Counted from the stretch's first letter, positions 4,553-43,859 are shown. The stretch: DNA of 64,000 bases from Phallusia mammillata (GCA_965637545.1 OZ281494.1:27218001-27282000), one strand, 5' to 3'. Numbers and translations: made by a program. The notes: generated by a model from the sequence alone, not told the origin.

Positions 4553-4591
4553 AACAATATGCTTATAATTTGTTTCGTTAACTTTATAAAG

Positions 4592-6690: not shown

Positions 6691-7939
6691 TTAAATCTTG
6701 GGAGGAAAGTCATTTTTCCACCTCAGCCAGTTTTTACTTTTGCGTTTTCGACCGCGTTTAGATTTTGGACGCGTAAAACAAACAGGTTTAGGGGCAGTTT
6801 TGTTTGATGGGGGTTCGTTGCCTGGAAATTGACAAGTACATGCAAATGGGACCTGGACTGTTTCAATACAGCGACGGCGTTTGCCATACTTTTTTACCAC
6901 CGTCATGGGCAAATACATTGGCACACTTCTCATACTCTTGTTTTCCCTTCCGGTGTCATAGTCGATGCAGCCGTCGCAAAGGCACTGGGCTTTTGATATG
7001 TACTTTGGTTTTCTAAAATAAAATGTTAAAAGTGAGCATTTGTTAACTTTTTAGGTTTTAATTTTGTTTTAAAATAGCATGAATATGAAAAAAATCGTAT
7101 CTTCTACCTCTTTAGGGCAGAAAAACTCCTACTTTGCAAAAAGTAATTTGTAAAAGCATGAATCATTACCTTCTCGCATCAAATTCGCGCACAAATTTCC
7201 AGGGTGACAAACTGCGTTGTCTAACAGCTTTGGCTTTTTGTTTATATCGTTTATTGAAACGTGGGCAGCTTTTACTTTGGACTGATCTCTTCTCGCGACC
7301 AACATAGTCCAAGTCATCGCTAGTGACGTTCACCACTTCCACTGTTTCCATGAGTTTCGGATCTTGGAGTAGAAGTTCTTCAAACTGATAGTATTCGTTT
7401 AACGGTTCTGCCAAAACCCTGTAATGAATAAATAGCTGTTTGTATAACAAGTTGGAGGTTGTAATTGACAATTCACGCGTGTATATTCTGTGTTCCCAGC
7501 AAGGGGGGAGTTTTTTTGGCATAAAGTAACACAAACGAGGATATAGTGCTTGGTAGCAGCTTTCAATATTATATAGCTTAAACCGTAAGAACACCGTTTA
7601 TTATCATCTCAAATAGTATGACAGTGATTCGAATTTGGTCAATACACAAACACTGCATTGCATCCAAACTATTGTTTATTGTTGGACGAACTTATACCTA
7701 ACTACACTGTTCGGAATAAGATAAACCTTCTCACGAAAGTGTAAAGTACACATGCAATGAATTAAAATCATATTTATGCCGATTTGCAGACACGACGATT
7801 TGGTAGCTTGAGTTAGATGGTATGATAAAGGGTAATTTACATTTCAATATACTTACCTTTCGTTGTTGAACATTTCAACTTCGCTTCCGGTCGCCAATCC
7901 CGCAATAAAAATCATCAACGTCGGCAAGATCAATGTCAT
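6691..7939 (-). CDS. IL17: IL-17 family cytokine, class b, copy 1 (~217 aa; REKR furin site, basic C-tail)
   Basis: Exons 7939-7857 (MTLILPTLMIFIAGLATGSEVEMFNNE), 7418-7170 (...GREKRSV...RSLSPWKFVREFDARR) and 7012-6691 (KPKYISKAQCLCDGC...VPFACTC...RPKSKRGRKRKSKNWLRWK...). Phase 2/2 introns. Confidence 0.9.
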
Positions 7940-8018
7940 GTCTTTATATGCTCACTTCTCTGCTTAAACTGTTGTCAAACTGCATCTGCAAACTGAATTG
8001 TTGACACGACGCGGCAAG

Positions 8019-8026
8019 CTTTTATA
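8019..8026 (-). promoter_or_regulatory. TATA box of IL17b (TATAAAAG)
   Basis: 80 bp upstream of the ATG on the minus strand; the same motif is at 18422-18429 and 29021-29028. Confidence 0.6.
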
Positions 8027-8756
8027 TCAGAAAGAGGAAAACTAACCCAAGGCGCAGCGAAAATGTCAAACAGTTGGCTGTGACAGTTGGCTTGGACGTA
8101 TTTCAACGCAACACATGAGTATACACGCTCGGCGCCAAACTTGACATCAAATCATTGCCATCAGAACTCCCAAAGGTATTTTGGCACAATGTTAAAACAT
8201 GCTTAACAACATGTTTGCAATGTATTTATAACACACATTCTCCTGGGCATTATTAATCTTAAAGGCTAGGTGGATCGCGAGAGTGGTTGGTAGATTTTTA
8301 GTCAAGTTGGCATTTGAGCAAATGCGCAGTTGTTTTGTTAGAGGTAGGAGTGGGTGCGAACAGCGTACTTTGGTGTATTAGAGAATCTGCGATCTATAGC
8401 AAATAGAAACCAAAAAATATATTCCTAGGTGTTTGTTTACTGCAGTACAAAAATTTAAGAGATTAAAACAAATTTAAATGTTGGAGCTTTTACCAAAGGA
8501 CTGTGCGACATAGAACATACATTGGTAGAAACTGTAGCAAAGAAAGTAGAAAGTGTAGAAAGAAGATAAACCTGAAGAAATAAAACGACTTTATATATCC
8601 TTTAGAATATTCATCCTTTAGAATATTTGGGTAATATTCAAAACACATAACACACTGATGTCAAATTAAAACTAAATTAAAATTGGGTAAATTAAACTAA
8701 CAGTGTTTATTTTGTTTGCCAGTGTTACTAGGCAGTATAAAAAAATAGTTCCAAAA

Positions 8757-10212
8757 ATGTTGCGGTTTGCAAATCATCTGTTTCTTTTTACCGTTTTGGC
8801 AGCTTTGGCACATTCATCATATGTTCCACCACCAACATGTGGGTATCATTTTTCCAGTTACTTTTTGTTAATAATGTTAGCGCATAACAATGACTCCAAA
8901 CTTATATTGGCTTATATCAGATATTTCGGATTTTACATTTAGAAAAAAAATAACATTATAAAATTTGGGAGGAATAAAATTCGCAGCGTTATTTAATTAC
9001 TGAACAATATCTAGCGCTCCAACAGACAGTTTGTTTATTATTAACAGTCGTCAATTTTAAAATAATTTTCTTTTTGTGTCAATCCCCTTTTTCATGAGCA
9101 TATCCTCTTTAAAAACATGTGACCACATTTCACTTATTCAATTTATCTAACTAACTGCATCAAAAAATTTTAGGCACCAAGCAAAACGAAATTATTGGTA
9201 GGCCGTTTCCTTGTGACGCGACATGTGCGAACCCGACTTCGTATGACGCGTGCTCCACAAGCACACCAACCTTCGTGCAAATGTCCCTGCGGATTTTTCA
9301 GAACCGAGGAAGGGAACTGTGTTTTTCTTCGCGATTGCCCTCCTAATAAGGGCCATCCTTGTAAGTATCTTCAGATTTAACCACTTAAGCGAGTTTGCAA
9401 AACGATCAATAACCAGCAACTTTAACGTCATTGTGGTTCAGTTACAACTATAGTGATGCATCGAAGTTTCGCTTGGGGAAAACATATCGGCTGAATATGC
9501 CGATTTGGCAATGTTGGTCATTTCTTTTGACAAATTGTTTTGTCTAGAAAACTAAAAAATAATAAAAACAGGAAAATATATTTTTAATATTTTCCATTCG
9601 AAGTCATTTATTATATGATCGTCAATGATCGTACTATCTGTTGGTTAGGGTCTGATACTGTTAAGTATAATCACGTTTAGCTTGGTAAAATATAATAAAT
9701 TGGGTTTACCTCGATTTCAGAAAACACAGTCATTCATTCTCGGTTTTCTTCTTAAAATACGGTTTAAAATTACTGAATTGAACTTTCTTAAAAACATCTT
9801 GATTTTAGAAAACATCATCACCCACTTTTTTAATTTCGTTTTAAAACACAGTCTACTTAAGTAGAGTTTTTACTGTATAAATTTTCTCTCAAACTGCGTG
9901 TTAAATCAACGGGTTTTTAGTGCAAATTACCATGAGGATTTTCAAAAATTTAAAACGAAGCACCCTGCAGCAGTTTGCAATTGTAACTCGCAGTTTATTA
10001 TTTTTTCAGGGACGCAGTGTGAGGAAGAACAGGTGATGTCTGCTAATCCGATGATTGCCGACGTCCCGACCCCTGACTGCGACCCAGTAACTGGAAACTT
10101 CATGCCCACGCAATGTGTTTACATGAGCCAGACTTGTTTCTGTGTTAATGTGTTAACTGGAAAGCAGTTAGATGGAACATCCACAACACTGCCTAAAAAG
10201 CCGAATTGCTAA
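8757..10212 (+). pseudogene. Secreted TIL (trypsin-inhibitor-like) + thyroglobulin type-1 domain gene, copy 1, +1 frameshift in exon 2
   Basis: Exon 8757-8838 is a signal peptide (MLRFANHLFLFTVLAALAHS). Exon 9174-9360 is the TIL domain (CDATCANP...C / CKCPCGFFRTEEGNCVFLRDC) and is 187 nt although phase 1/1 needs 3n. Exon 10010-10212 is the TY domain (QC...CDPVTGNFMPTQC...CFCVNVLTGKQLDGT...PNC). A splice-acceptor-like site precedes the ATG (8710-8722). Confidence 0.8.
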
Positions 10213-13200
10213 GGTTAGATTGTCGACTTGGTATTATAGACTAGTGGTTCTCAAACGTCAAGAATGCGGCGCATGAACAACTGAGATTGCTTTTTATGAC
10301 ATATAAGTAAAAAATGAGCTTTTAAACGTTGTAAATATGTAAGACACATCGCCATCAAATCTAAAAAAACACGAATACAACGATAAAAAACTGTCTTGAA
10401 ATGCCGAGTCCTAAAAGGTTTGGTTTTCTGAGTTGGAGACCTTGTGGTTCTTAATTCCCGTGGCAGGTTAAAATACAGAAGGTGGTACTGAATCTAGGTA
10501 AACAAATGAACACTATAGAACCAATGTAAAAAAACAGCACGAAACCACATGTAACCAAAGGTGCCGTGCCCTAATGGAAACTTCTGTTAACTACAGAAGT
10601 ACTCCAGCCAATAAAAACATGAAAGAAACTATGTCATCGATACAGCAGTGATTCTTAAACGGTGTGCAACACACTGGTGTACCCCGATAGATTTTTAAGT
10701 GCCGCCAATTTAATCAGTTCAAACATTTCCTGGTGTTGTAGCATTTGATTACTAAATGCATGACAACGTATTGAAGCTCATTGTTTTTGTGGTTTCCATA
10801 AAAAGTAATCTTAGACACCACAATGAAGTTGCAAAATAACCATTTTTAACAATTTTGTTATGTTTGCCTTCAAAGCATGCCATGAAATAAACAATTAGGT
10901 CATTAATGGGGCGCATTTTTGAAAAGTTTGAGAACCAATGGCCTACAGCGCTTGACGTGAAAACATTTTTGCTTGAAATTTATTTGTTTGTTTTTTGCAG
11001 ATTCTGGTCGATAAGGAATGGTAAAAAAGAGCTTTGACAATGCATGCTTTTTGATTTTATTGAGTTTAATTGCAAATAAAAACGCACCGTAAATTCTTGC
11101 ATATCTGTAACTATTCAACCGAAAGTTTTTTCTTGTGAACCGTTTAACGCAAGAGGACATATGTTGGCTTTATGTTATTGCTGAATTTACATTAAAGTGG
11201 TTTTAGGTCGAATGCACAAAAAATTATGAATGAAAGTTTTAAATGCAGCAGTGGACAGAAACGTCAGTTACCCAAACGAATAATAATAACAAACTATACA
11301 TTAACACTATCATAAAGCTATGTTGCAATGATGTTTGTATGTGTAAAAATTGACAAACGTTCTGTGCACGAATGAACTATTTTTCAACAAAGACGATGGA
11401 CCTGAGGTAAAGTATGGAAAAATGTAGCACTCTACCTGCGGCAGGGCGTTGATATTGTTTGCTAAGTGTGTGTTGTGTTCAATCGCCAGTCATCTTTATA
11501 ACTCCGCAGGCAAAGTGTGCTGTAACTACACAAGGCGTTTTGTGTTCGTCTTGCCAAATCTGTTGGATGTTTGGCAGCAAGCAAGTTTAGGCTTTAGCTT
11601 GGTACTATGTTAGCCCACAAGTAGTTTAGGATATGTTTGAGTAGCCTTTTTGGATGGTGTCGATTGGAGCTGTTGCAAAACAAGCACTTGTAAAAGTAAT
11701 TGAGAAACATGCGACGATCAGAGCCAAATTGAGTAGACTCAATAAACTGCAAGTTGAAGTTAAGGTTGTATGAGCCATCATGAACCGCAACAACATAAAT
11801 ATCAACGACGACTTTGGTAAGTACAATAATTGTCAAACATTCCCCCAAATGCTCCCCAATGACAAAAACTTTTCCCGCCGTTGCAACTGTTGCGCCATTG
11901 TATCATTATTACGACATAACTGCAAATCTTCTATATGTCTCAATTTCAAGGTTTTTGTCTAAACGTGTAGTAAGGTTGTTGTTTGCGGTAGTTAGTTGTG
12001 TCAGTTTTAAGTTGTGCTGTAGTGGTATAATTTACAATTATAAGTTAGGTTATTTGACTGTTTGTAGTGCAATGTACTTTATTCTATTTGGTTTAGGTTG
12101 TCGAAAACCAACGTTCTCATTCTAGAGACTGAACGGTAGAACTAGCAAAAAACTTGTACGTTACTGTTAGATGAAAACGAATGACTGAAAGCGCCTTATT
12201 GTCATAATAACCATTGCGACTACAACTCAAGAGTGGCATGTGGTGGCTGCCTTCTTAAAACCATGATCAGGATCTCCAGGTTAGAAGTTTAGAAAATGTC
12301 TTTTGTTTTTGATTTTTCCTAAAATAGAAAGTCGTAGTCAATTTACTGCAGATCCGCTTGCTTTGCATGTTATATTGCTGCGGACAATTGTTTTTCTACT
12401 GCCACGACTACAAATTGTCAAGATATCGAACGGTGTTTTTATAGATTATTGGGATTTCAGGTCAGCCGTTTTTTGATTGTTTGATAAACTATTTATCATA
12501 GTGCACCAGAGTCAAATTCATTTTGTGTCATCAATCACGATTTAACTGTTTCGATCATGATGTGATTGCAACATATCATACCCATGTTTACTCTGAAACG
12601 TTGTTTGACCATTAGAAGCTTTAAAATATTACTGTTGAAAATAAACCTAAATCATGAATACCAAAATATAGTTTGTGAAACCACGACGTATAGATATTGC
12701 GAAACAATTATGTAAGCAAGTGCAATTTGTCTTGTATTTTTGTTAACTGGTAATTTTTGGCAATTATTTTGCTTATTTAAGTACAGTCTTTGCGTATTTG
12801 CGTGACTAACGTTTGTATGTGACGTCACACACTTTGTACTGACGTATACCAACGCCAAGGCTAACCAAAAGAGATGAAGAATATTATCATTCGCTTTCGC
12901 CACGACTTTCGATTGAGAAAGCAACAATTTGAACAAAACTGAAAAACATAATTATATAGCTGTAAGAAGTTTGAGTATATAATGGAATATTGTGTTCACA
13001 TATGTATTTTCAAGAAAAATATCCGTTTGGCGAAATGGACGAACATAATGACAGCATATTATCAAATCTAACGTCATGTTTTGAAATGTAAACACTATCG
13101 TGCTTAAAGCATTGCAATTACTCCCAATTTTTTCCTACGATTGAAGAAAAAACGCAAAACCTGTGCTCGAACTTCCATGACCTTTGTTTGCGCGTTTTGT

Positions 13201-13594
13201 TTGTTTTCTTGTGTTAAAAATGAACAGGTCTGTTTTTCTAACTCGACTCTATCGGTATTTACGTGCGGATATGACAAAAACACGACGCAACAAACTAAAC
13301 TATTATTGCACTTGCGTTTTTCCTATCATGGACGCATCCTATGACTGCAAACACGACGTGGACGAACTTACTCATTTTACGCCGCGTTATTTGAGCAACG
13401 TGCCGCTCAGGGCGTGTCACAAATATTCACCAGATATGCTGTGACAAACTCTTGAAAAAACATGGAACAAGTTTTACCGGAATGAAGTCAGTTTCCTAGA
13501 CTTCCGTCAGTCGTATGAAAAGACTAGACAGCACATCTGATAATCAGAAACTAGTTTGTAAGAGCAAGATACTTTGTTACAAATACATTCGAGT

Positions 13595-14879
13595 ATGAAA
13601 TTTCTCGTTTTTATGTCTTGGTTAGTGTTCATCGGTATTCGCTTTTCTTTCGGACAAGTGTAAGTTAAATAACATTGATTTTATAGGCTACTAGTACAAT
13701 ACTTTGCAGTAGTGTTTTGATTCCGTGTTGTAAGTACTTTAGGCTACCCGACTTTGTAAGCTATCATAGCATGCCTTGCAGTTGTAGCATTTCCTTGCTT
13801 AATTTAATTCAAAAACGTTCATGTTTCGAAATCGTTTGCATTATTGAGTTAAAATACGATTTGCAACATCATTTAATCTCAATTGGGTTCACAAGGCTAT
13901 CTCGAAACAAATCCGGCTAAGATTAAAACGCCGTGTACCCAATACGTTATGCAACATGATGACAAAACACAAACATTAGCGATTTATTTTTAGTCTCGAT
14001 TTTGACGAATATGTGAAATTGGATGAAAAACTTCACAAGGATGCAGATTTTCGCAGCAGCCTCGAGACAATAAATAATGAAACTGTTGGTCAACATGCCA
14101 TGCATAATGTTGATTCGAAATGCCTTAGAATATTTCGGGACCTTGTGCAAGGGACGGACCAGTCTATGGGAGCCAGATCCCTTTCTCCCTGGCGATATGT
14201 GAAAAATTACGACAGTCGAAGGTAGACAGAAGTTAATAATTGTTGATGTTTGTACATTTTGCAGTAATTGCTTGAAATCTAAAGTAGCCTGACTGCTTTA
14301 CACAACTATATCACTTGAATATGAATTCTGAAAGCATTTTTCTGTTGAATTTGTACCTAAAACAGATTTAAGAAATCCTTTCCGTAATCGAATAAAATAT
14401 TTTGCAATATGTTTATCCCCGCTGCTGCTAAGTTTAAATTAAAATTTTTCACCAAACACTTTTTGCAAGAAGAAATTCCCTAAATGTTTCCAAAATGACC
14501 AAAATAGTTTACAGTTCGCTTTCAAAACTGTGGAAATGCAAAAATAACTGGAAATCGTGCAAAGTGCTTTTTGCCATTGCCTAAGCGTGCGAACTATTTG
14601 CATAATTTCCTTATTTGGACTCTCTTGTCCAACCACACTTCTGTAAAAATCAGACACCTTTGCATATTTCCGGACAGAGCGCCGGAAGACCGTTACATAC
14701 TGGACACAGCTTGCGTCTGTCGCGGATGCTTTGTTAAAAACGGGGCATCATCTTTTGTCTACACTGAGAGTCTGATCAGCAGACCTATCCCCTTCAGTCG
14801 CAACGTACGAGCAATGGATTACACATCTGTACCAGTCAAAGTCAACCTGGGCTGCCATTGCGTGTTTCCAACCACGTGA
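13595..14879 (+). CDS. IL17: IL-17 class a, copy 2 (~164 aa; C-terminal 16 aa lost to AGA>TGA)
   Basis: Exons 13595-13659, 13994-14221 and 14678-14879. Cystine-knot cysteines intact; ends ...GCHCVFPTT*. Confidence 0.88.
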
Positions 14880-15752: not shown

Positions 15753-15863
15753 GACAGGACCTTGGCCGAATGGTCAGGCACGCCTGACCCATGTATACAG
15801 ACATAAAAAACCTTGATCGGGAACCCCGTGAAAAAAATAAATAAATAAATGAATAAATAAAAT
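15753..15863 (+). mobile_element. tRNA(Leu)-like short SINE, copy 2
   Basis: Same sequence and 15-bp TSD as 5377-5487. Confidence 0.7.
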
Positions 15864-16673: not shown

Positions 16674-16940
16674 TTGGAAATGTATATCGGGAAGACTGGA
16701 AGGTCACTCAACACCCGCCGAAAAGAACATCAACGGGATGTTGCCAACAACGATGCGAAGAAGTCGGCTCTTTCCAATCACGCGATATCACAAGGCTACC
16801 GTATTGAGTTCAATGCGGCGTCTGTTGTGGCCCGACAGCCTGACTACAGGAAAAGACTATTTCTTGAGTCATGGAATATTTACCAACGGGGCAACACAAT
16901 GAACATTAAAACAGACGTGATGCTACAGGCACATGCTTAA
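16674..16940 (+). mobile_element. Penelope-like GIY-YIG relic (copy 2)
   Basis: Same ORF as 6264-6521, with a small deletion near the C-terminus. Confidence 0.8.
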
Positions 16941-17093: not shown

Positions 17094-18342
17094 TTAAATC
17101 TTTGGAGGAAAGTCATTTTTCCACCTCAGCCAGTTTTTACTTTTGCGTTTTCGACCGCGTTTAGATTTTGGACGCGTAAAACAAACAGGTTTAGGGGCAG
17201 TTTTGTTTGATGGGGGTTCGTTGCCTGGAAATTGACAAGTACATGCAAATGGGACCTGGACTGTTTCAATACAGCGACGGCGTTTGCCATACTTTTTTAC
17301 CACCGTCATGGGCAAATACATTGGGACACTTCTCATACTCTTGTTTTCCCTTCCGGTGTCATAGTCGATGCAGCCGTCGCAAAGGCACTGGGCTTTTGAT
17401 ATGTACTTTGGTTTTCTAAAATAAAATGTTAAAAGTGAGCATTTGTTAACTTTTTAGGTTTTAATTTTGTTTTAAAATAGCATGAATATGAAAAAAATCG
17501 TATCTTCTACCTCTTTAGGGCAGAAAAACTCCTACTTTACAAAAAGTAATTTGTAAAAGCATGAATCATTACCTTCTCGCATCAAATTCGCGCACAAATT
17601 TCCAGGGTGACAAACTGCGTTGTCTAACAGCTTTGGCTTTTTGTTTATATCGTTTATTGAAACGTGGGCAGCTTTTACTTTGGACTGATCTCTTCTCGCG
17701 ACCAACATAGTCCAAGTCATCGCTAGTGACGTTCACCACTTCCACTGTTTCCATGAGTTTCGGATCTTGGAGTAGAAGTTCTTCAAACTGATAGTATTCG
17801 TTTAACGGTTCAGCCAAAACCCTGTAATTAATAGATAGCTGTTTGTATAACAAGTTGGAGGTTGTAATTGACAATTCACGCGTGTATATTCTGTGTTCCC
17901 AGCAAGGGGGGAGTTTTTTTGGCATAAAGTAACACAAACGAGGATATAGTGCTTGGTAGCAGCTTTCAATATTATATAGCTTAAACCGTAAGAACACCGT
18001 TTATTATCATCTCAAATAGTATGACAGTGATTCGAATTTGGTCAATACACAAACACTGCATTGCATCCAAACTATTGTTTATTGTTGGACGAACTTATAC
18101 CTAACTACACTGTTCGGAATAAGATAAACCTTCTCACGAAAGTGTAACGTACACATGCAATGAATTAAAATCATATTTATGCCGATTTGCAGACACGACG
18201 ATTTGGTAGCTTGAGTTAGATGGTATGATAAAGGGTAATTTACATTTCAATATACTTACATTTCGTTGTTGAACATTTCAACTTCGCTTCCGGTCGCCAA
18301 TCCCGCAATAAAAATCATCAACGTCGGCAAGATCAATGTCAT
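17094..18342 (-). CDS. IL17: IL-17 class b, copy 2 (~217 aa)
   Basis: Exons 18342-18260, 17821-17573 and 17415-17094; open frame and canonical splice sites. Confidence 0.9.
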
Positions 18343-24258: not shown

Positions 24259-25551
24259 ATGAGATTTCTCGTTTTTATGTCTTGGTTAGTGTTCATCGGT
24301 ATTCGCTTTTCTATCGGACAAGTGTAAGTTAAATAACATTGATTTTATAGGCTACTAGTACAATACTTTGCAGTAGTGTTTTGATTCCGTGTTGTAAGTA
24401 CTTTAGGCTACCCGACTTTGTAAGCTATCATAGCATGCCTTGCAGTTGTAGCATTTCCTTGCTTAATTTAATTCAAAAACGTTCATGTTTCGAAATCGTT
24501 TGCATTATTGAGTTAAAATACGATTTGCAACATCATTTAATCTCAATTGGGTTCACAAGGCTATCTCGAAACAAATCCGGCTAAGATTAAAACGCCGTGT
24601 AGGCGTGTACCCAATACGTTATGCAACATGATGACAAAACACAAACATTAGCGATTTATTTTTAGTCTCGATTTTGACGAATATGTGAAATTGGATGAAA
24701 AACTTCACAAGGATGCAGATTTTCGCAGCAGCCTCGAGACAATAAATAATGAAACTGTTGGTCAACATGCCATGCATAATGTTGATTCGAAATGCCTTAG
24801 AATATTTCGGGACCTTGTGCAAGGGACGGACCAGTCTATGGGAGCCAGATCCCTTTCTCCCTGGCGATATGTGAAAAATTACGACAGTCGAAGGTACACA
24901 GAAGTTAATAATTGTTGATGTTTGTACATTTTGCAGTAATTGCTTGAAATCTAAAGTAGCCTGACTGCTTTACACAACTATATCACTTGAATATGAATTC
25001 TGAAAGCATTTTTCTGTTGAATTTGTACCTAAAACAGATTTAAGAAATCCTTTCCGTAATCGAATCAAATATTTTGCAATATGTTTATCCCCGCTGCTGC
25101 TAAGTTTAAATTAAAATTTTTCACCAAACACTTTTTGCAAGGAGAAATTCCCTAAATGTTTCCAAAATGACCAAAATAGTTTACAGTTCGCTTTCAAAAC
25201 TGTGGAAATGCAAAAATAACTCGAAATCGTGCAAAGTGCTTTTTGCCATTGCCTAAGAGTGCGAACTATTTGCATAATTTCCTTATTTGGACTCTCTTGT
25301 CCAACCACACTTCTGTAAAAATCAGACACCTTTGCATATTTCCGGACAGAGCGCCGGAAGACCGTTACATACTGGACACAGCTTGCGTCTGTCGCGGATG
25401 CTTTGTTAAAAACGGGGCATCATCTTTTGTCTACACTGAGAGTCTGATCAGCAGACCTATCCCCTTCAGTCGCAACGTACGAGCAATGGATTACACATCT
25501 GTACCAGTCAAAGTCAACCTGGGCTGCCATTGCGTGTTTCCAACCACGTGA
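24259..25551 (+). CDS. IL17: IL-17 class a, copy 3 (~164 aa; early TGA as in copy 2)
   Basis: Exons 24259-24323, 24666-24893 and 25350-25551. Confidence 0.88.
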
Positions 25552-27333: not shown

Positions 27334-27618
27334 TTGGAAATGTATATCGGGAAGACTGGAAGGTCACTCAACACCCGCCGAAAAGAACATCAACGGGATG
27401 TTGCCAACAGCGATGCGAAGAAGTCGGCTCTTTCCAATCACGCGGTATCACAAGGCCACCGTATTGATTTTAATGCAGCGTCTGTTGTGGCCCGTGAGCC
27501 CGACTACAGGAAAAGACTATTTCTTGAGTCATGGAATATTTACCAACAGGGCAACACAATGAACATCAAAACAGACGTGATGCTTTCAGCGTGCTACAGG
27601 CACATGCTTAAAGATTAG
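27334..27618 (+). mobile_element. Penelope-like GIY-YIG relic (copy 3, 94-aa open frame)
   Basis: YIGKTGRSLNTRRKEH...TDVMLSACYRHMLKD*. Confidence 0.8.
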
Positions 27619-27762: not shown

Positions 27763-28941
27763 TTAATTTAAATCTTGGGAGGAAAAGTCATTTTTCCACC
27801 TCAGCCAGTTTTTACTTTTGCGTTTTCGACCGCGTTTAGATTTTGGACGCGTAAAACAAACAGGTTTAGGGGCAGTTTTGTTTGATGGAGGTTCGATGCC
27901 TAGAAATTGACAAGTACATGCAAATGGGACCTGGACTGTTTCAATACAGCGACGGCGTTTGCCATACTCTTTTACCACCGTCATGGGCAAATACATTGGC
28001 ACACTTCTCATATTCTTTTTTTCCCTTCCGGTGTCATAGTCGATGCAGCCGTCGCAAAGGCACTGGGCTTTTGATATGTACCTTGGTTTTCTAAAATGAA
28101 ATGTTGAAAGTGACCATTTCTTAACTTTTTAGGTTTTAATTTTGTTTGAAACCAGCACTAAAAGGAAAAAAATCGTATCTTCTACCTCTTTTGGGCAGAA
28201 ACAAATCATACTTTACACAAAAGTAGATTGTAAAAATATTAACCATTACCTTCTCGCATCAAATTCGCGTACAAATTTCCAGGGTGACAAACTTCGTTGT
28301 CTAACAGCTTTGGCTTTTCGTTTATATCGTTTATTGAAACGTGGGCAGCTTTTACTTTGGACCGATCTCTTTTCGCGACCAACAGAGTCCACGTCATCGC
28401 TAGTGACGTTCACCACTTCTACTGTTTCCATGAGTTTCGGATCTTGGAGTAGAAGTTCTTCAAAATGATAGTATTCATTTAACGGTCCAGCCAAAACCCT
28501 GTAATTAATAGATAGCTGTTTGTATAACAAGTTGGAGGTTGTATTTGACAATTCACGCGTGTATATTCTGTGTTCCCAGCAAAGTGAAGTTTTTTTGGTA
28601 TAAAGTAACACAAACGAGGATATAGCAAGTGCTTGTTAGCAGCTTTCAATATTATATAGTCATAAACCGTAAGAACACTGTTCATTATCATCTCAAATAG
28701 TATGACAGTGGTTCGGAATAAAATAAACCTTCTCACAAAAGTGTAAAGTACACATGCAAGGAATTAAAATCATATTTATGCCGATTTGCAGACACGACGG
28801 TTTGGTAGCTTGAGTTAGATGGTATGATAAAGGATAATTTACATTTCTTTACACTTACATTTCGTTGTTGAACATTTCAACTTCGCTTCCTGTCGCCAAT
28901 CCCGCAATAAAAATCATCAACGTCGGCAAGATCAATGTCAT
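27763..28941 (-). CDS. IL17: IL-17 class b, copy 3 (~219 aa; native promoter)
   Basis: Exons 28941-28859, 28498-28250 and 28090-27763. A 1-nt indel changes only the last residues (FSSQDLN vs FPPKI). Confidence 0.9.
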
Positions 28942-34500: not shown

Positions 34501-35942
34501 TGTACACAATCACTAGGAGGTAGCACAGAGATCAGCTAATTTGAAGTATGTCAATACCCATTATGTTAATCACCTGTTGTTCGTCCTCTTCATCTGTCTC
34601 GTCGTCTTGGCATGCCGCTTTTTGCTGGAGAACTTGCACCAAGGAGTTCATCAACATCTGCCGGGTAAATACAAATTACAATAGCTGGATGAAAAATTGC
34701 GGTAAAAGTCATCGTACACAAGTTAGTAACAGTTTGTGATAGGAATTCGTCGACAACCTTTTGTATGTAACGGATCAAAACTAAGATCAGCCAAGTCGGT
34801 GTGAACCGGAAATTATTTTATTTTAAATTCTCTTTCCATTACTGTTAACCATGTTTTTTATCCTCTCAATTTTGACGTATTTTCATCACATTTTCTCATT
34901 GTTAGGCTACTAATGGGCAAAAATTTGATCAATTATAAAAACTTCCTTGGACGATTTTAACGATTATCATGCAACAAAAACTATTGTCCACTAGCGAACA
35001 GATAAAACATAATAAATGTAAGGTGTTCCATCAACAACAAAAAATTGGACGCTCAAGTTTGATAGCTTTGAGGGAAACAAAATGTCGTCAAGTCTTTTAG
35101 GTTTTGCTAGGGTCGCTAGTCGCTACAACGTTTTCTTATTAGGCCAAATTATTAGGGAGCATCTCTGGTTGACTTAAAAATTAAACAAAACTATCTAATA
35201 CCAGCAGCATTTGCGATCGTGAAAGCAGTCAAACAAATTTTACCGCAAAGAAACGTAGCAAATATTTAGTGACAACATCAGTATCAGTTTTAAATGAAAT
35301 TTTGTTTTCCTCGATGAGTCGACACATTACGTTGTAAAAAATTTCGCAACAAATCGACCTATCGGACAAAATCCCATTACTAGTTTGTCGTTTCGGTTAT
35401 TACCCAAACGGATTACACGTAATTATACTGATGACCATTCAATTAAAAGAGAAACAAATATTCCGGAAAACAACATCCCATCGCGAAAGCAATTGGCACA
35501 AAAACAAACGATTGGTGTTTCTCAGCACATCCACGGAAATGTTTAGCGAGAAAGTGACGGGTGATAAAAACAATGGTAAGGGGGCGAAATGCCCCCTTTC
35601 AATCACGTGATGCAGATGACACAATTCGTACACTGTTGCTGGAGGCAACAAACAAATCAAAGATTTAACTCCCTTGTATCTAGTGAGAGTAAGCAAAAAG
35701 TGCTATCGCTATAGCTAAATACGTCATTTTATGCTAGTTTAAATGTAAACACAATAGAAACTTTTGTTTTTGTAGTTTCTTGTTTCCAAAACGTGCGCTG
35801 CAATGGTGGAATCACGGATTATGAGTAATAGTGAAAATTATTTCATTTGGTTTCGGAAGCGTTCTGTTATACATAAAAGACAGAAGGGATTGCAGAAAGT
35901 CAAAACTCAATCTTAAGATAAAAAGAATTAAAAATACAAAGA

Positions 35943-37332
35943 ATGTGGACAAGAGGTTTGATTTTAGGTATATTTGTGACCTGTGTCTGTTTGTTTCAAC
36001 TGATGCCCTACTGCACAGCAAAAAGGTGAGTGTAACAGAATGTCAAGATAATACTGCATTGATACTGTTTCCATTTTTTAACACTTATGAAGTGGAAATA
36101 CAGAAAAAAAATTTCCACTGGCAATAAATTTGTATAGCAAGATGTTTTGTAGACCTCATAGTTTTGTATTTTTTCTGCATACTTGCAATTTATTTTGCAA
36201 TATGTTGCAGTGAAGTGGATTGACGAAGATGTACAAAAATCCATACTGATACAGTCTATTAAGTTATTTAAATGTTTAATCCTGTTCACATTTATTTAAC
36301 TGATAGTTTTTATTAACAAGGCTGCGTTTTCAAGATTGACGCTTGGGCTTGTGTGACGTAACAATTCATAGTGTTGATTTTAGAATTAATACGTTTGTGC
36401 GGCAGAAAGAGAGAGAAAGAGTGGCAAAAACCAACACTAAAACTTATATTTCCACAGTGGAGCGTTAGTGGAGTACTGGGAGATGGCAAGGGTGTTGGGA
36501 ACACAACCAATGGGGGACAAGCAATTGCCAACGATCAATGTGACTGGACTAAGTGCGGATGAGATAGTGGAACACAAACGCCAGGCGGCCACCACGATTG
36601 GGTGCCCCACTTTTACAGAAGAGTACAAGGAGAACGCGCGTCAACAAAGACAGCGCAGTATATCCCCGTGGAAGTATGTTCAAAACTATGACAGCCGAAG
36701 GTGGGTTGAATTGATCAATACTGTTTTGGCGCAAATTTGTGCAAAATTACACAAACGAACCATGCTAACTTTTTAAAGTTGGACGAACACTACAAAATAT
36801 TGTTGATCACATTTTTTATAAGCATGTGCAATACTTTTTATTACCTCCCAAAACATATTTACTCGAAACCAAGATTTTTCAGGTACTTTTTAGACATCAG
36901 CAAGCTCTCGGTCACATTGGCAACTCTTAACTTTTGGACCATAACTATTGGATCGAAAAGGGTTTCGGGATTGCATAAAAGCATTTTATTCGTAAAAACA
37001 TTTAATTCGGTCCTATTAAACCTTTCGCTCACCCTGGCAAAAATGGCACTCACCCAGTTAAAGGACAGGCATAGACAAGATTGAACGCCTAAAAACTAAA
37101 CAATAAGTTTTGTTTCAGACCGCCCGGACAACGTTTATTCCTGGATAGCGTTTGTCTGTGCGATGGCTGCATTGACCCGATTTCTGGCTTGGAGGTTAGA
37201 ACCGGTTTAAAAAGCGTCGGATTAAAACTACCCAGAAACGTTAGTGTGCTCAATGCTACTGGCCAATACGAAATGTCGGAAATCAACGTACAATTTGGCT
37301 GCCACTGTGTTGTGCAAAACACGGAATCTTAA
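35943..37332 (+). CDS. IL17: IL-17 class c (~179 aa), nested antisense in IPO4 intron
   Basis: Exons 35943-36025 (MWTRGLILGIFVTCVCLFQLMPYCTAK), 36458-36700 (...EHKRQ...RSISPWKYVQNYDSRR) and 37119-37332 (...VCLCDGC...QFGCHCVV...). Confidence 0.9.
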
Positions 37333-38397
37333 ATCTACCAAGCAGTAGAATGTTTTTTATACAACATGTGGATTACAATATTGTTGTTATTATTGTTTTT
37401 GCCTTTTCCAAATTATACGCACCAACAAATATTTTTACTATGTTTCAACCGAATTTTATACATCTGCTTTAGTGTCTTAAGCGTTAAGACTGTTGCCAAC
37501 AAACTAAAATGTAGGTTAAGCAATTTTAGCTGGAATTTTTCAATTAACTGATGGGTTGCGACAGCCTAGTCTGAAGTATCATAAAAGATTATTCAAAATT
37601 CAGAGAACAGAACACTTGACTCGATAACCCAATGTTTTTAGGTGTCATTGCTGTTTACTTAACCGTTCAACAAAGGAACTGTGATGATGCTTATGAAATT
37701 TTAACTTTGATTAAAAAAGAAATAGTAAAGCTTATAAAACCATTATTCCCTACCGAAACACCTCGAAACCATACAAATTAACAGCGACATCCAACGGCCA
37801 AAAGTGTTTTTAACTTCTTTAACAATTTAAGCTAAGTTTCGAAAATGCATCATGACGAAAACTAAATCCATAGATTCTGTTGCGAAATTAGCCTATTGGT
37901 AAATGCGGACAACGAAACTTTGTAGCAACTGAAAAAACGTGGTGTTTTTAGCAAGCTTGTTGGAACTGAAGATTTTAAAACAATCAAATATTTTCCATCA
38001 TAGCCAAATAGTTTCGTGGAAGCAGGCATGTCAAAGAAACTGTCCTCCAAAAAGTTTTCCTGAAATTTGTCAATACAGTTTAATCGTCAAAAGCAACCAG
38101 TTAAAAGAATACTTTGTTTTCGGGACTAAAACAAACAGTTTCTTGCATGAAAATGGTATTACCCAAATCAAATTTCAATGGGAAAAATCTGACTTTATGA
38201 CGTCGCACTGACACCGGCGCAACCATGTGAACAATGGTCAATACAAAATAGCTTAAACAGCACCCGGCCTTTGCGAAAAACGTGCGTAATTCTATTTCTT
38301 CCTTCTTCCTACTTCCTACTTCAAGCGATATAAACTGGCACCAACAATAACGTTCGCAAATAAAGTTTCACCACAGACAGCTCCAAGTATTCAAAAC

Positions 38398-39482
38398 ATG
38401 AAGTTGATCTTGAAGACGATTATGATTTTTATAGTGGGGTTGACGAATGGAATTGAAGTTCATCCATTCAGTAAAGAAACGTGAGAATATTTGCACGTAT
38501 ATTATAATACTGTATTGTTATGAACATATTGCCGATCTGAAGTATATTCAGAAACTTTAGGCATAATCACAAAATGACCGATTGTAATTATTTGCCATTT
38601 TTATGCAAGGCGACCAATTTTGTCAACATAATCCCTTAAGGGCATTTTTTTCTCTCGCTAACACTTTTGTCCTAATGGGCGCAAACGTTGTAATTATAGA
38701 GCTTTGGCTGATGGACTGTTGGAAGAATATTATCAGTTTGAAGAACTTCTACTCAAGGATCCAAAACTCATGGACACATTGGAAGTGGTCAACGTCACTA
38801 GCGATGACGTGGAGACTTCAAGTCGTGGAAAGAGATCAGTCAAAATTCAAAGCTGCCCAGTTTTTACTGAAAGTTACAAAGAAAATGCAAGGTTCCTGAA
38901 AGAACGCAGTCTATCACCGTGGAATTTTGTGCTCGATTATGATGCAAGAAGGTGAGTAATAGGAAAATAAAATCTAATTGTTTAGTCACAAAGTCAAACA
39001 TATTTAATTAAATAAAGAGCATTATTGTTAACGTACGGCACAAAGCATCATCATAAAAATGACAGTGGGGAAATTTGAACTTGACGATCGATTTTAGTGG
39101 GAAACTTCACCAAAAAAGGTTAAGAACCACTGTAATAGGTAATATTTTACAACCTTCTTCTGTACATAACATATTCGTTCCACGGTGGTGTTTTGACAAA
39201 AAACTGAAACGTCTAATCGACTGACCATTTATCAACATTTTTAGACGAAAAAAGTACATAGCAAAAGCCCAGTGCCTTTGCGACGGCTGCATCGACATTG
39301 AAACTGGAATGGAAAACAAAAATATGAGAAGTGTGCCAATGTTTTTGCCCGTTACGATGGAAAACATGTATGGTAGATGCAGTCATTGTATTGAAACGAT
39401 TCAAGTTCCTTTTGCATGCACTTGTCAATTTCCAGTCACCGAACCTCAATTAACGAAAACTGCTCCTAAAGCTGTTGTTTGA
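38398..39482 (+). CDS. IL17: IL-17 class d (~190 aa; RGKR furin site; close paralog of class b), nested in IPO4 intron
   Basis: Exons 38398-38480, 38700-38951 and 39245-39482 (KAQCLCDGC...VPFACTC). TATAAA at 38329-38334. Confidence 0.9.
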
Positions 39483-42400
39483 TCCCAAACATCAAAACTG
39501 ATTCTTGGCCTAAACCTTGCATAAGTTGACACATTTTACATCGCAACGTGTTTATTTCTCTGTATTTGCTCTCAAATAAAAGAGTTGTTTATTTTCGAGT
39601 TTCGACTGCTCTCTGTTGACCGTTGACTTCACTTTTACTTCCGTTGATTGCTTAAAAATCTGTTGCTAATGTAAAAGTCGTAAAAGACAACAGTGAATCG
39701 TTTGTGCAAATATGCAACATTCAGACACAGGCAAAGTTTTTCAAGAAATCACGACAGCAGAACAGACGATTAGATAAAAACCGATTGCAAAAACAATACA
39801 AAACCAATAAAGGTGACGATCTCTAAGGCAAGTATTACATTGTAGGGTCAAAAATGACGCTGATGCAAAATATGGTAACTAACAGACAAACAAATATTTA
39901 AGTAAAACATGACGATCTTGTATACTTTTAGAATTACGAATGTTTTTAAAAACGCAGTGACCATGGAGATCGTACATCTATAATAATTTATCTGGTTTCC
40001 AACCTTTATCGACAAAATGCTGACTTATCACGTCAATTATTCCTCCCCAATACACTACATAGTAGATTCAAAACCATACAAACATCATTTAAAATTGGGT
40101 TCTTTATCAACTTCACAGGTCATATTTCCAGAGCTAAAGTGTCTATTTTCAAACCACATGTACAAAATATAGGAAATTTTTCCATCCGGTTTTGAAATAC
40201 CTTCGTTGGGAGGTATTACTGCGCTTGACTGGGAACCACTGATCTATCTCATTATGCGTTCTGGCGCAAAGAGCATCAATTCAATTCTACTTTTTAAGTC
40301 GCAAAAATCCGGGAATGCAGAAACCATAAAAGTACGTTCAAGTTGAGGGCAAGTAAATTTAATACAAAAAGTTTGCGTAACACATCAATAACGAAATGAG
40401 AAATTCGAACGCCGGTCGAAAGTTGTAAGTGATGGCGGAAAGCAAAAACCACGATGGAAACCTCCTTTTATTTAATCACACGGAAGAGTGACTGGTGATA
40501 CGCATATACCTGTTTTTAAATACTTTTTGATGCAAGCAGTAAGGTTGTGATTTTGTATTTGCCAGTTCATATGTCCCATTTCAGGTTAAGTATGCACACA
40601 CAATCAAAAGTTTAGCCAACTGACTGCAAGTCATAAAATGTTGAAAAATGAAAAAAAATCTACATGTCGCAGCATGACCACAAGCAAATTGTTTTTTCTA
40701 AACAAAATCCAAACCCGATTCAACTGATATCAGATATCTATGTTTTCTGCTTTATATTACATTTTTGGAATAAAAAAGAAATTTCTAATAGACCTAAAGG
40801 GGCAACTGGGATTATAAAATCACTTATGCCCTAAACTTTCCAACAAAAATATGCACTAATAAACTTTCCAAATATTACGTAATAGTACTCTTCTTTACTC
40901 TTAAAGAAACATCATAAACGATCATCAAAACATGCCAGATCAAATTTAACTATATTTTCTATTTTTATTTGGCACATAAATAGACTGTACTTTTTCGCCC
41001 TTGCTTTTAGTGCGTCGTGTCAATACAATGGTCACGAAAATGCGTCGTTACGCAAATGACGTTGCACGCTCCTTGTATTGAATGCTGACTCAGCGGTATT
41101 TTAGGCACAGCGAATATGACATGACAATAAAAATAACGGTATCGGTCTCGGTCGGAAAGGAAACGTGTTTTCCGTTTTGGCATTGGCATTTTAAAAATAA
41201 ATACTTATTATATTGGTTCTATTTAAAACTAGGGACTTGAAAATAAACTTTCAACCAAAGAATACCACAAAATCTAATCTCACAAACGGGTAAACTTGAG
41301 TATACACTTCACTTTTGCAGCGCGTAAGTTTTCACCGAGCTTGCGTATTGCAAAACAAAGTCTAAACAAAGGACAACTATTAAAGACACATTTCAAGTAA
41401 TTTTAAGCGATTAAATTACAGAACAAAATTTCTTTAAATTTTTTGTATCCTACGCCTCTAACAGATTATTGATTTCAAAATGTCCTTTTAATCTCTGGTC
41501 ATGGTTAAGGACTTTTTTATTCTGTAAAAAAACTGTTACGACCTCGCGATATGGTTGTCAACCGCGATCAAACAGAAAAAAAACATTCCAACTATTAAAA
41601 TTCACAGCGACACCCCACGGCAAAAAGGATTTTTTACATCCGTCCTACATTCTAGAGACAAAGCGTTGAAAATCCGTTACGACGATAAACAAGTCTGTAA
41701 ATTCTGTTGCAAAATGAGCTAATTGTTAAATGCGGACCACGCAACGAAATCTCAAAGTGATACTTGTAGCAACTTAAAAAAACGTATCACTTTCAGCAAG
41801 CTTATTAAATATAAAGATTTTAAACAACCAAATATTGTCCATCATAGACAAACAGTTTCTCAAAAGCAACAAATGAACGGTGGTTCTAAAACAAGATGTC
41901 AAATAAGGGATAAAAGTTGCACCGAAAATTTCCCTAAAATCCAACTTTTGAAAGCAACCACTTAAAACAATACTTTCACCGAGCGAAATAAACTCAACTC
42001 AACTCAACTTTATTTTCGGGACTAAAGCAAATAGTTTCTTGTGTAGAAAAGGAATTACCCTAATTAAATTTCATTCAGAAAAACCTGATTGTATGACGTC
42101 GCACTGAAACCGGCGCAACCATGTGAACAACGCTCAATACAAAATAGCTTAAACAGCATCCGGCCTTCGCGGAATAACTACGCAATTTAAAACTAAGGGT
42201 GTGCAAAATCAATGAAAACGTCCACCACTAGTGTAGAGGTTCAATGACTAGTGTAACGGTTTTTTGGTTACGTAACCAACATAAAGAAGATTGGTGATTT
42301 GACTCATTTGCTATGATTGAGTGGCCTGCGCATGGCCTTGCTGGCAGATACCTAAAATACATTCATGTACGGCTAAAAATGAGTGGTTTCCGCTGCAGGA

Positions 42401-42531
42401 AAGAAGTTTAGTTTCTGATGGGCAGGATAAAAAGGGAAGAATTATGCTAAAAAGTATTGTAACAGTTTACAGTAGTTGGCAACGTACAGAAACGTTTAAA
42501 GAAGACATTAAAAAATTACCAAAGAAGAGAA

Positions 42532-43859
42532 ATGTTTAAGCTGATTATTGTTCTGGTGATTTTGGTCGCAGTTAAACCAGATTTTATGCAGGTGGACGCC
42601 TGTAGTTTTGAAAGGTACGTTAAAATATTGCTAAATCCAAATGGTGTAACGTTTTTTGTCGACAATCTGCTTTCCAAACATAATACTAATTATTAAATAA
42701 AAATAATTGTTGTGGTTATTTTGTAGAACAGGTTTTGCAGGTTGTCATTCTAACTACTCTAACTATAAGAAAAAAAAGTTTAGTAACTATTTTTTAATTC
42801 TGGTACATTATAACAAACGTCATATTTTATAACGGGGGTGCATTAAAATTGTTTGAGCTGTTTAAATAAAGAATTCTTTTTTAACATGGTTAACCGTACT
42901 TTGGCGTATATGGAAACAAACGGCATATAAGCTCATATCTTTCCACAACCTTTAGCATCAATACGGAAGAATACTGGACCCGAGAAAAGGCGATGCGAGA
43001 AAATAAAGCGATACTAAACAACATGGAGACTTTTCAGAATCAAACAGGGAATATGGATCATGTTTCACCGGACAAGAAAAAGTGTTTGAAGCATGTGGAG
43101 ATGTTGGAAAAGAAAACATACGACGGTCTTTGTAACCGCGTAATGTCACCGTGGAAATACGTGAAAAACTATGACAGCCGAAGGTTCGTTTGACTGGCAA
43201 AATTACTAGATCGAAGATAGTTCTTGATGAAATCATATGGCTAATAAAAGGTTAATACCAAAATATAAAGCAATACACAAAACCAAACTTATTGTTCACG
43301 GTATATTGTAATACAACCAGTTTCCATGTAAACTGCAGCGTGTTAAAAATAAAATCCTTATTTTAACTTTCTAACAACAATTTCCTTGATTTCTTTCGGC
43401 ACATCATTCCTGTAGACTGGATACCAAAAAAGAAAACATGTCAAATTCATCCAAAAACGCGCAAATGTTATAGCACACCATCAATCGTTCTAAAATAAAT
43501 AAAAATGTTTGCCGCTAACCAAATCATACATGTAAAATAACGGAGCAGTATTGCAACAATTTAATATTGAATCATTAAACCATCAACATTGCTTCAGGTC
43601 CGATGACGATCGTGACATTGTAGACGTGGAATGTTTATGCCGGGGCTGCATGGCAAAAATCGGCAGTGGTGAAAATCCGAAATATATTTACACCGAGCAG
43701 TTGGAAAGTAGGCCGTTGAAAATGCAACGAACAGTGACTATGATGAACGGTGAAAAACGAACAGTGTTAGTGAGGGTTGGATGCCATTGTGTGTTTCCTA
43801 CAGGCTACCGGCCGTCTAGATACGGATTATCAAACGACAAGTTGCTTTTGACTTCTTAA
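42532..43859 (+). CDS. IL17: IL-17 class e (~190 aa; related to class a), nested in IPO4 intron
   Basis: Exons 42532-42614 (MFKLIIVLVILVAV...), 42956-43183 (...NRVMSPWKYVKNYDSRR) and 43598-43859 (ECLCRGC...VRVGCHCVFPT...). Confidence 0.9.

What the first reader, a model, noticed from the sequence alone, without database searches (positions are those of the whole stretch)
7170..43183. IL-17s with a conserved glycosylated pro-region and proprotein-convertase sites: a possible processed IL-17 subfamily
All five classes have an N-terminal extension after the signal peptide with an aligned EY motif and N-x-T sequon (a NET, b NVT, c NVT, d NVT, e NQT). In b (REKR|SV), d (RGKR|SV) and c (HKR|Q), a furin/dibasic site lies 6-8 aa before the first mature-domain Cys; a and e lack it. 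Vertebrate IL-17s are not generally described as furin-matured, whereas other cystine-knot factors (NGF, TGF-beta, PDGF) are. This suggests activation by proteolysis for b/c/d and an uncleaved form for a/e, possibly as heterodimers.
Basis: partly seen in the sequence, partly recalled or inferred. Interest (0 to 1): 0.8.

Follow-up and report, generated by a model that had tools for sequence, protein, structure and literature searches.

The report
Sea-squirt IL-17 genes with convertase sites
A tandem cluster of sea-squirt IL-17 cytokine genes encodes an extra acidic N-terminal segment, and in some classes a furin-type cutting site conserved in other sea squirts, so these chordate IL-17s are probably made as precursors that are cut before use, though no cutting has been shown.

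Summary
The window holds 11 three-exon IL-17 genes: a and b four copies each, and c, d and e once each. Each has a signal peptide, then a 38-55 residue acidic segment with an invariant [E/D]-Y and an N-x-T sequon. The first cysteine lies a fixed 20-21 residues before the RSxSPW motif.

Classes b (REKR|SV) and d (RGKR|SV) carry a minimal furin motif 6 residues before that cysteine. Class c has only a dibasic KR, with Glu at P4. Classes a and e lack exactly this 5-6 residue cassette.

The motif is kept in a diverged paralogous cluster 0.9 Mb away, with synonymous codon changes. It is also kept in 10 of 11 homologues found among 1.84 billion proteins; the only named ones are Styela clava. The sequon is less conserved (13 of 20).

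Cleavage itself is inferred only. No RNA or protein data exist, and the structure model is poor.

Dibasic processing is already known for an IL-17-domain protein (crustacean CFSH) and for related cystine-knot ligands (Trunk). I found no description of it for chordate IL-17s. The verdict is a plausible new variant of a known kind. The heterodimer idea is untested.

The parts
3248..4552 (+). IL-17 gene a1 (exons 3248-3312, 3619-3846, 4279-4552; 188 aa). It has EY and NET but no basic site.
6691..7939 (-). IL-17 gene b1 (exons 7939-7857, 7418-7170, 7012-6691; 217 aa), with a basic C-terminal tail.
7286..7297 (-). b1 R-E-K-R codons, a proposed convertase site followed by Ser-Val. The same motif is at 17689-17700 (b2) and 28366-28377 (b3).
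7322..7330 (-). b1 N-V-T sequon in the pro-region.
7391..7396 (-). b1 E-Y motif. The Tyr is invariant in all 16 relatives that cover this column.
13595..14879 (+). IL-17 gene a2 (172 aa).
17094..18342 (-). IL-17 gene b2 (217 aa).
24259..25551 (+). IL-17 gene a3 (172 aa).
27763..28941 (-). IL-17 gene b3 (219 aa).
35943..37332 (+). IL-17 gene c (exons 35943-36025, 36458-36700, 37119-37332; 179 aa).
36573..36581 (+). c H-K-R. This is a dibasic site only (Glu at P4), 7 residues before the first Cys.
38398..39482 (+). IL-17 gene d (exons 38398-38480, 38700-38951, 39245-39482; 190 aa).
38824..38835 (+). d R-G-K-R codons, a proposed convertase site followed by Ser-Val, 6 residues before the first Cys.
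42532..43859 (+). IL-17 gene e (exons 42532-42614, 42956-43183, 43598-43859; 190 aa). It has EY and NQT but no convertase motif.
55509..56777 (+). IL-17 gene a4, a diverged copy. Exon 1 is about 80% identical to a1 and SPW has changed to SPC. The outer coordinates are approximate.
58683..59264 (-). IL-17 gene b4, probably defective. Exon 2 (59264-59028) keeps REKR but has a 4-residue deletion after SPWK, and no exon 1 was found. The lower coordinate is approximate.

Best explanation
The region is a tandem array of IL-17 family cytokine genes in an ascidian (sea-squirt) genome. I infer the host group from the only named homologues, which are Styela clava proteins; the species was not determined.

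Each gene encodes a prepro-type protein with these parts, in order:
- a signal peptide (exon 1);
- an acidic segment of 38-55 residues (pI 4.1-5.0), predicted helical, with an invariant [E/D]-Y and usually one N-glycosylation sequon;
- a linker;
- a basic IL-17 core starting at a Cys-Pro, a fixed 20-21 residues before RSxSPW.

In classes b and d, and in their paralogues and orthologues, the linker holds R-x-K-R followed by Ser, 5-9 (mostly 6) residues before that Cys. My inference is that a furin-like proprotein convertase cuts there in the secretory pathway. The cut would release the glycosylated acidic propeptide and leave a mature chain whose N-terminus lies about where mature vertebrate IL-17A begins. 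Class c has a weaker KR site that may be cut by a prohormone-convertase-type enzyme or less efficiently. Classes a and e lack the cassette and would be secreted with the segment attached.

Shown: gene structure, motifs, their conservation, and the presence of convertase genes in the genome. Inferred: signal-peptide cleavage, glycosylation, proteolysis, and any effect on activity.
For: - IL-17 identity: Pfam PF06083 hits on exon 3, the RSxSPW motif, and PDB matches to IL-17F, IL-25 and IL-17A for the Styela homologue.
- Coherent three-exon models with GT-AG, phase-2 introns and hydrophobic N-termini.
- The exon-2 alignment shows EY, the sequon and the basic site.
- Own-genome search finds 18 such exons. 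A second cluster 0.9 Mb away has b-like copies with RREKR|SA and GREKR|ST and a c-like copy with RKRR|AA, at only 50-68% identity to the window copies.
- Codons differ synonymously at the site: P4 is CGC, CGT or CGG; P1 is AGA or AGG; P1' is TCA or TCG.
- A profile search of 1.84 billion representatives gave 11 relatives. Ten have R/K-x-K/R-R 5-9 residues before Cys-Pro. Three are Styela clava RefSeq proteins.
- The R, K, R and S columns rank among the best-conserved columns, while their flanks vary.
- Classes a and e differ by a gap of exactly the cassette.
- The pro part is as conserved as the mature part between paralogues, 50-66% against 54-80%.
- The pro part is acidic and the mature part basic.
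- In the AF2 model of the Styela homologue, a helix spans 49-80 and the sequon and RPKR lie in a low-confidence coil at 81-114.
- The genome has at least 4 loci with the convertase P-domain.
- One homologue sits as an uninterrupted 164-aa ORF on a 1.3-kb contig, which looks like mRNA.
Against: - There is no direct evidence of cleavage, secretion or glycosylation.
- No RNA run holds these genes, so the gene models rest on splice logic and homology.
- Classes a and e keep the same segment without a site, so the segment can evidently function uncleaved.
- b is very rich in Lys and Arg and has other R-x-x-R strings (KRRR in the core, RGRKR in the tail), so motif matching alone is weak for b.
- c has Glu at P4.
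- The AF2 model is poor (pLDDT 59, 16-row alignment), so site exposure is not established.
- Taxon sampling is narrow: this genome, Styela, and unidentified contigs.
Confidence: 0.6

Rival explanations
1. The N-terminal segment is a permanent part of the secreted cytokine, like the long N-terminal extensions of vertebrate IL-17B, C, D and E. On this reading the conserved basic motif serves another role, such as glycosaminoglycan or receptor contact or a structural turn, and is not cut.
For: - Classes a and e, and a-like L015, keep the segment with no site.
- The pro part is as conserved as the mature part.
- The knot motif C-L-C-x-G-C is of the IL-17B/C/D/E type, and NCBI names a Styela homologue 'IL-17C-like'.
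- From memory only, not tested: human IL-17B has an E-E-Y, a sequon and R-K before its first Cys.
Against: - The conserved pattern is specifically R-x-K/R-R followed by Ser, at a fixed distance from the Cys, within otherwise variable flanks.
- The acidic pro part and basic core resemble known propeptide systems.
- No tool result links the segment to vertebrate extensions: Pfam and PDB searches gave nothing.
Confidence: 0.25
2. The site is cut, but outside the cell by a regulated trypsin-like protease as an activation switch, as with Spaetzle or coagulogen, rather than constitutively by furin in the secretory pathway.
For: - Related cystine-knot ligands use extracellular cascades (established knowledge; the Toll-Spaetzle analogy is discussed in PMC6303783).
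- c has only KR.
Against: - The full R-x-K/R-R|S consensus in most members is the signature of intracellular furin-type convertases.
- Trunk, the closest relative of IL-17, is reported to be furin-cleaved intracellularly.
Confidence: 0.1
3. The finding is an artefact. On this reading the motifs are chance products of basic-rich composition, or the N-terminal segment is not translated because the gene models are wrong or the genes are pseudogenes.
For: - There is no RNA support.
- b4 and a4 look defective.
- b is Lys/Arg-rich.
Against: - The segment lies in the same exon and frame as the first Cys and RSxSPW.
- The frame stays open across paralogues of 25-66% identity and in Styela RefSeq proteins.
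- Synonymous change occurs at the site.
- There is an mRNA-like contig of a homologue.
Confidence: 0.03

Closest known systems
Vertebrate IL-17A/IL-17F (e.g. PDB 3jvf, 4hr9)
   Same: - IL17 domain (PF06083).
- RSxSPW motif.
- Four knot cysteines of the two-disulfide type reported for tunicates and vertebrates (PMC11087794).
- An N-terminal Cys-Pro ahead of the core.
   Different: From established knowledge, the vertebrate mature chain starts directly after the signal peptide, with no pro-region or dibasic site described. Here 38-55 extra residues precede the Cys. The Cys-to-SPW spacing is shorter here, at 20-21 residues.
Crustacean female sex hormone (CFSH), an IL-17-domain prohormone
   Same: The layout is the same: signal peptide, short precursor-related peptide (33 aa), dibasic KR, then a mature chain with an IL-17 domain (PMC6056722). 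It also signals through IL-17 receptors (PMC10604874, PMC11087794).
   Different: - It is an arthropod neurohormone, not a chordate cytokine array.
- It has eight cysteines.
- Its conserved sequon lies in the mature peptide (PMC10604874).
- It was not among the hits of the profile search, so no sequence similarity of the pro-peptides was detected.
Trunk/PTTH and neurotrophins (NGF, BDNF, NT-3)
   Same: - Cystine-knot ligands made as proproteins and cut at basic sites.
- Trunk is reported as the closest relative of IL-17 and as furin-cleaved (PMC11087794, PMC6303783).
- A language-model look-up of the Styela pro-region listed Spaetzle, NGF and NT-3 clusters first, but at 0.80, which is chance level.
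   Different: - Different receptor classes.
- No Pfam NGF, NTF3_N or Spaetzle hit on the segment.
- Any resemblance of the EY, sequon and RxKR order to neurotrophin prodomains is recalled from memory and untested.
Styela clava predicted proteins XP_039270229, XP_039260030 ('IL-17C-like') and XP_039270092 ('IL-17F-like')
   Same: They share the architecture: [E/D]-Y helix, variable linker, RPKR|SA, RQKR|SA or REKR|SI, Cys-Pro-x-Phe, and RSISPW.
   Different: - They are 31-40% identical to b over exon 2, 38-43% to one another.
- They have a longer N-terminal part with two extra cysteines.
- The sequon is present in one of the three.

Membership tests
IL-17 cytokine family (Pfam PF06083) | Profile match above the curated cut-off of 24 bits | tested here: met
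   exon 3 alone: b 55.6, d 44.3, c 34.2 and a 25.6 bits. e scores 22.1, just under the cut-off on exon 3 alone. The Styela homologues score 55-71 bits.
IL-17 cytokine family (Pfam PF06083) | Conserved RSxSPW motif and the paired C-x-C cysteines of the knot | tested here: met
   S-P-W is invariant in 20 of 20 sequences. C-L-C-x-G-C and C-x-C are visible in every model. Exception: a4 reads SPC.
IL-17 cytokine family (Pfam PF06083) | Secreted dimer that signals through an IL-17 receptor | not testable with these tools
   Hydrophobic N-termini fit signal peptides by my own rule of thumb. No SignalP, receptor or dimer test was run.
Proprotein-convertase-processed precursors | R-x-K/R-R motif after a signal peptide | tested here: met
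   Met in b (REKR) and d (RGKR). c has KR only. Absent in a and e.
Proprotein-convertase-processed precursors | Site conserved in paralogues and orthologues while the flanks vary | tested here: met
   15 of 17 occupied columns, synonymous codon variation, and 10 of 11 external homologues.
Proprotein-convertase-processed precursors | Site in an exposed, flexible segment | tested here: inconclusive
   In the AF2 model of the Styela homologue the site lies in a coil with pLDDT below 50. The whole model is poor, with mean pLDDT 59 and pTM 0.27.
Proprotein-convertase-processed precursors | A convertase is present in the organism | tested here: met
   PF01483 P-domain at 4 or more loci of the genome.
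Proprotein-convertase-processed precursors | Cleavage actually occurs | not testable with these tools
   No proteomic or expression data are available, and no RNA run holds the genes.

The most novel reading that the evidence does not exclude
The layout of signal peptide, acidic helical propeptide with [E/D]-Y, sequon, R-x-K-R, and then a short stretch before the first Cys is the ancestral precursor form of the IL-17 lineage. On this reading it is shared by descent with Trunk/PTTH and CFSH, and perhaps with neurotrophin precursors. It would be kept in tunicates and lost in vertebrate IL-17A/F, while classes a and e here, and vertebrate IL-17B/C/D, would be stages in the loss of cleavage. Chordate IL-17 signalling would then originally have been gated by convertase processing, with cut and uncut paralogues giving distinct or latent ligands.
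Probability: 0.2. Interest if true: 0.7.

Novelty: new variant of a known kind. Interest (0 to 1): 0.5.

Why it matters
IL-17 cytokines of vertebrates are treated as ready to act once the signal peptide is removed. Tunicates are the sister group of vertebrates. A conserved convertase site there would mean that some chordate IL-17s are made as pro-cytokines, which adds a control step (processing, latency, a released glycopeptide) absent from current models of the pathway. It would also tie IL-17 more closely to its cystine-knot relatives (Trunk, PTTH, CFSH, neurotrophins), all of which are cut from precursors. The natural contrast within one locus, between cut classes b and d and cassette-less classes a and e, gives a ready experimental system. 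If cleavage does not occur, the cluster is simply an ordinary lineage-specific IL-17 expansion.

Tried and rejected
- **Word-based protein searches.** Searches with b exon 2, b exon 3 and a 16-row alignment found nothing new. The tool's length and word limits mean this says little.
- **RNA support.** No run on record as RNA holds the genes. Laying four RNA-labelled runs on 3200-8000 gave no contig on any a or b exon, only matches of 90-99% to dispersed repeats at about 5350-5550 and 6270-6515. IL-17s are usually induced, so silence in these small runs is not evidence against expression.
- **Metagenome scan.** It recovered only the contigs of one already known fragment cluster.
- **Pfam and PDB on the N-terminal segment.** No family and no solved relative was found.
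- **ESM Atlas look-up of the Styela pro-region.** Spaetzle, NGF and NT-3 clusters ranked first at 0.80, a level that shuffled proteins reach a third of the time. I kept this as a lead only.
- **AF2 model.** Confidence is too low for a fold search or for claims about propeptide packing.
- **Exon 1 of gene c.** I first took 36128-36220 as exon 1 and suspected a frameshift. I rejected this when the true signal-peptide exon was found at 35943-36025 by comparison with the c-like paralogue.
- **Mussel IL-17 supplement.** The one sequence I translated by eye has no R-x-K-R before its Cys-Pro. I did not pursue this.
- **Spliced proteins.** I did not submit the window's spliced proteins to folding or complex prediction, because they have no reference and would have had to be typed. 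The a/b heterodimer idea was therefore not tested.
- **Ciona IL-17 sequences and Vizzini 2015.** Neither could be retrieved.
Full report
**What is in the window**

The window is AT-rich eukaryotic DNA (GC about 36%, no N). A tblastn of ORF-derived peptides against the window, plus reading of splice sites, shows eleven IL-17-like genes in five classes.

- a (+ strand) and b (- strand) lie tail to tail in a repeat unit of about 10.4-10.7 kb that occurs three times in tandem. Starts are a1 3248, b1 7939, a2 13595, b2 18342, a3 24259 and b3 28941.
- The unit occurs once more in degraded form. a4 starts near 55509 and reads SPC instead of SPW. b4 has exon 2 at 59264-59028 with a 4-residue deletion, and no exon 1 was found.
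- c (35943-37332), d (38398-39482) and e (42532-43859) are single copies on the + strand.
- Every intact copy has three exons with GT-AG introns, both in phase 2.
- Exon 3 alone matches Pfam IL17: b 55.6, d 44.3, c 34.2, a 25.6 and e 22.1 bits, against a cut-off of 24.

The window lies at C1:27218001-27282000 of a 240-Mb assembly.

After a hydrophobic N-terminus, every class has a segment with E-Y and one N-x-T sequon (a NET, b/c/d NVT, e NQT). The first Cys follows, always 20-21 residues before S-P-W.

- b reads G-R-E-K-R|S-V and d reads S-R-G-K-R|S-V, each with 6 residues to the Cys.
- c reads E-H-K-R|Q-A with 7 residues to the Cys. This is only a dibasic site, because P4 is Glu.
- a and e have no such motif and are shorter by exactly the 5-6 residues that carry it in the others. 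For the same reason their sequon sits 15 rather than 21-22 residues from the Cys.

**Is the site more than chance?**

*Paralogues.* An own-genome search with the exon-2 profile finds 18 such exons.
- Fourteen are in this cluster, including c', d' and e' just past the window end.
- Four are in a second cluster 0.9 Mb away. There the a-like copy again lacks the site. The two b-like copies read R-R-E-K-R|S-A and G-R-E-K-R|S-T. The c-like copy reads R-K-R-R|A-A, a full furin consensus, and has lost the sequon (D-I-T).
- These copies are only 50-68% identical to the window copies over exon 2.
- The site codons differ synonymously: P4 is CGC, CGT or CGG; P1 is AGA or AGG; P1' is TCA or TCG. That is what purifying selection leaves.
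- A third group on contig C3 (S-P-Y instead of S-P-W) has one member with K-A-Q-K-R|S 8 residues before Cys-Pro and one without.

*Other species.* A profile search of 1.84 billion representative proteins returned only 11 relatives.
- Ten carry R/K-x-K/R-R 5-9 residues before Cys-Pro-x-Phe: RPKR|SA, RNKR|SL, RQKR|SI, RPKRR, RHKR|GT, RRKR|SA, RQKR|SA, REKR|SI, RTKR|SV and KEKR|DL.
- The eleventh has R-R-R a little further upstream.
- The three with names are Styela clava RefSeq proteins, labelled uncharacterized, 'IL-17C-like' and 'IL-17F-like'. This places the window in another ascidian, but I did not determine the species.
- The other eight come from unlabelled SRA assemblies and marine metagenomes. 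One sits as an uninterrupted 164-aa ORF with an IL17 domain on a 1.3-kb contig, which looks like mRNA.

*Column conservation.* In a 20-sequence non-redundant alignment, the R, K, R and S columns (15 of 17 occupied) rank with the best-conserved positions, just below the Cys, S-P-W and the Tyr of [E/D]-Y. The flanking linker varies in both sequence and length.

*The sequon is less constant.* A sequon lies between the helix and the site in 13 of 20 sequences. The aligned position alternates between N and D.

**Properties of the two halves**

| Property | Pro part | Mature part |
|---|---|---|
| Isoelectric point | 4.1-5.0 (net -2 to -9) | 7.8-10.5 |
| Identity between paralogues | 50-66% | 54-80% |

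- b is extreme: its mature part has net charge +30, owing to a Lys/Arg-rich C-terminal tail.
- Because the pro part is about as conserved as the mature part, it is not a mere spacer.
- An AF2 model of the Styela homologue is poor overall (pLDDT 59, pTM 0.27). It does predict a helix over the [E/D]-Y region (residues 49-80, pLDDT about 80). It places the sequon and RPKR (100-103) in a low-confidence coil before the Cys-Pro. This is compatible with an accessible site but does not prove it.
- The genome encodes convertases: the P-domain PF01483 is found at four or more loci.

**Most likely mechanism**

The proteins enter the ER and the signal peptide is removed. The acidic segment is glycosylated where a sequon exists. 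In b, d and their relatives a furin-type convertase then cuts after R-x-K-R. This releases the propeptide and leaves a basic IL-17 chain that starts 6 residues before the first Cys. From established knowledge, mature human IL-17A likewise starts 9 residues before its equivalent Cys-Pro.

- c would be cut less efficiently, or by a prohormone-type convertase.
- a and e would keep the segment.
- Every step after the gene models is inference. I put the cleavage hypothesis at about 0.6.

**Rival explanations**

- The segment is a permanent N-terminal extension, as in vertebrate IL-17B/C/D/E, and the motif has another role (0.25).
- The cut is made extracellularly by a regulated protease (0.1).
- The finding is an artefact (0.03).

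**Comparison with what is known**

- None of the IL-17 evolution papers I could read mentions furin, propeptides or dibasic sites: PMC8353272, PMC5457136, PMC4517768 and PMC11087794. Targeted searches found none for IL-17 cytokines. The Ciona IL-17 paper (Vizzini 2015) is not in the library, so prior description for tunicates cannot be excluded.
- The principle itself is not new. Crustacean CFSH is an IL-17-domain protein described as signal peptide, 33-aa precursor-related peptide, KR, then mature hormone (PMC6056722).
- Trunk is reported as the closest relative of IL-17 (PMC11087794) and is reported to be furin-cleaved (PMC6303783).
- No Pfam or PDB relative of the pro-segment was found.
- A language-model look-up pointed to Spaetzle, NGF and NT-3 precursors, but at chance level.

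**Verdict**

The site is real and under selection in ascidian IL-17s, but processing is unproven. It is best filed as a new variant of a known kind, of moderate interest.

Noticed in passing
G000:C1:28198313-28213473 (L015-L018) and C1:27283324-27290021 (L005, L008, L014): A second, diverged IL-17 cluster (a-like, two b-like, c-like) lies 0.9 Mb downstream. Near-identical copies c', d' and e' lie just past the window end, so the c-d-e block is duplicated too.
   Followed up: partly
G000:C3:22252216-22259354 (L019) and C1:26184831-26185046 (L020): Four more IL-17 genes have a different N-terminal exon. The two C3 copies I read carry S-P-Y instead of S-P-W. One of them has K-A-Q-K-R|S 8 residues before Cys-Pro and one has none. 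The C1 gene has neither the EY nor a convertase motif.
   Followed up: partly
window 6691-6790 (b1), also b2 and b3: b has a very basic C-terminal tail holding R-G-R-K-R, and a K-R-R-R inside the core. These are further convertase-like strings. The mature b has net charge about +30. d lacks the tail.
   Followed up: partly
window 4498-4552 compared with 14877-14879 and 25549-25551: a1 reads 16 residues past the point where a2 and a3 stop (188 against 172 aa), so the stop codon differs between otherwise near-identical copies.
   Followed up: no
window 55509-56777 and 58683-59264: The fourth a/b unit looks degraded. a4 has SPW changed to SPC and an exon 1 only about 80% identical to a1. b4 has a 4-residue deletion after SPWK and no detectable exon 1.
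   Followed up: partly
window about 5350-5550 and 6270-6515: Between a1 and b1, short contigs from RNA-labelled runs of the same species match at mostly 90-99% identity and run on into unrelated sequence. These are probably dispersed repeats that are transcribed or abundant elsewhere.
   Followed up: no
window 9898-10212 (+): An ORF here matches the thyroglobulin type-1 repeat (PF00086, 37 bits), probably an exon of an unrelated gene within the repeat unit.
   Followed up: no
window 27334-27618 (+): By eye, a 94-aa ORF resembles a GIY-YIG nuclease module such as those carried by Penelope-like retroelements. Pfam gave no hit, so this is unconfirmed.
   Followed up: partly
pro-region, e.g. window 7391-7396 and 38725-38730: The invariant Tyr sits in an acidic context (N-E-Y-Y-Q-F-E-E, E-E-Y-Y-Q-F-E-E, D-E-Y-V-K-L-D-E). 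This resembles tyrosine-sulfation sites. It is speculative and untested.
   Followed up: no
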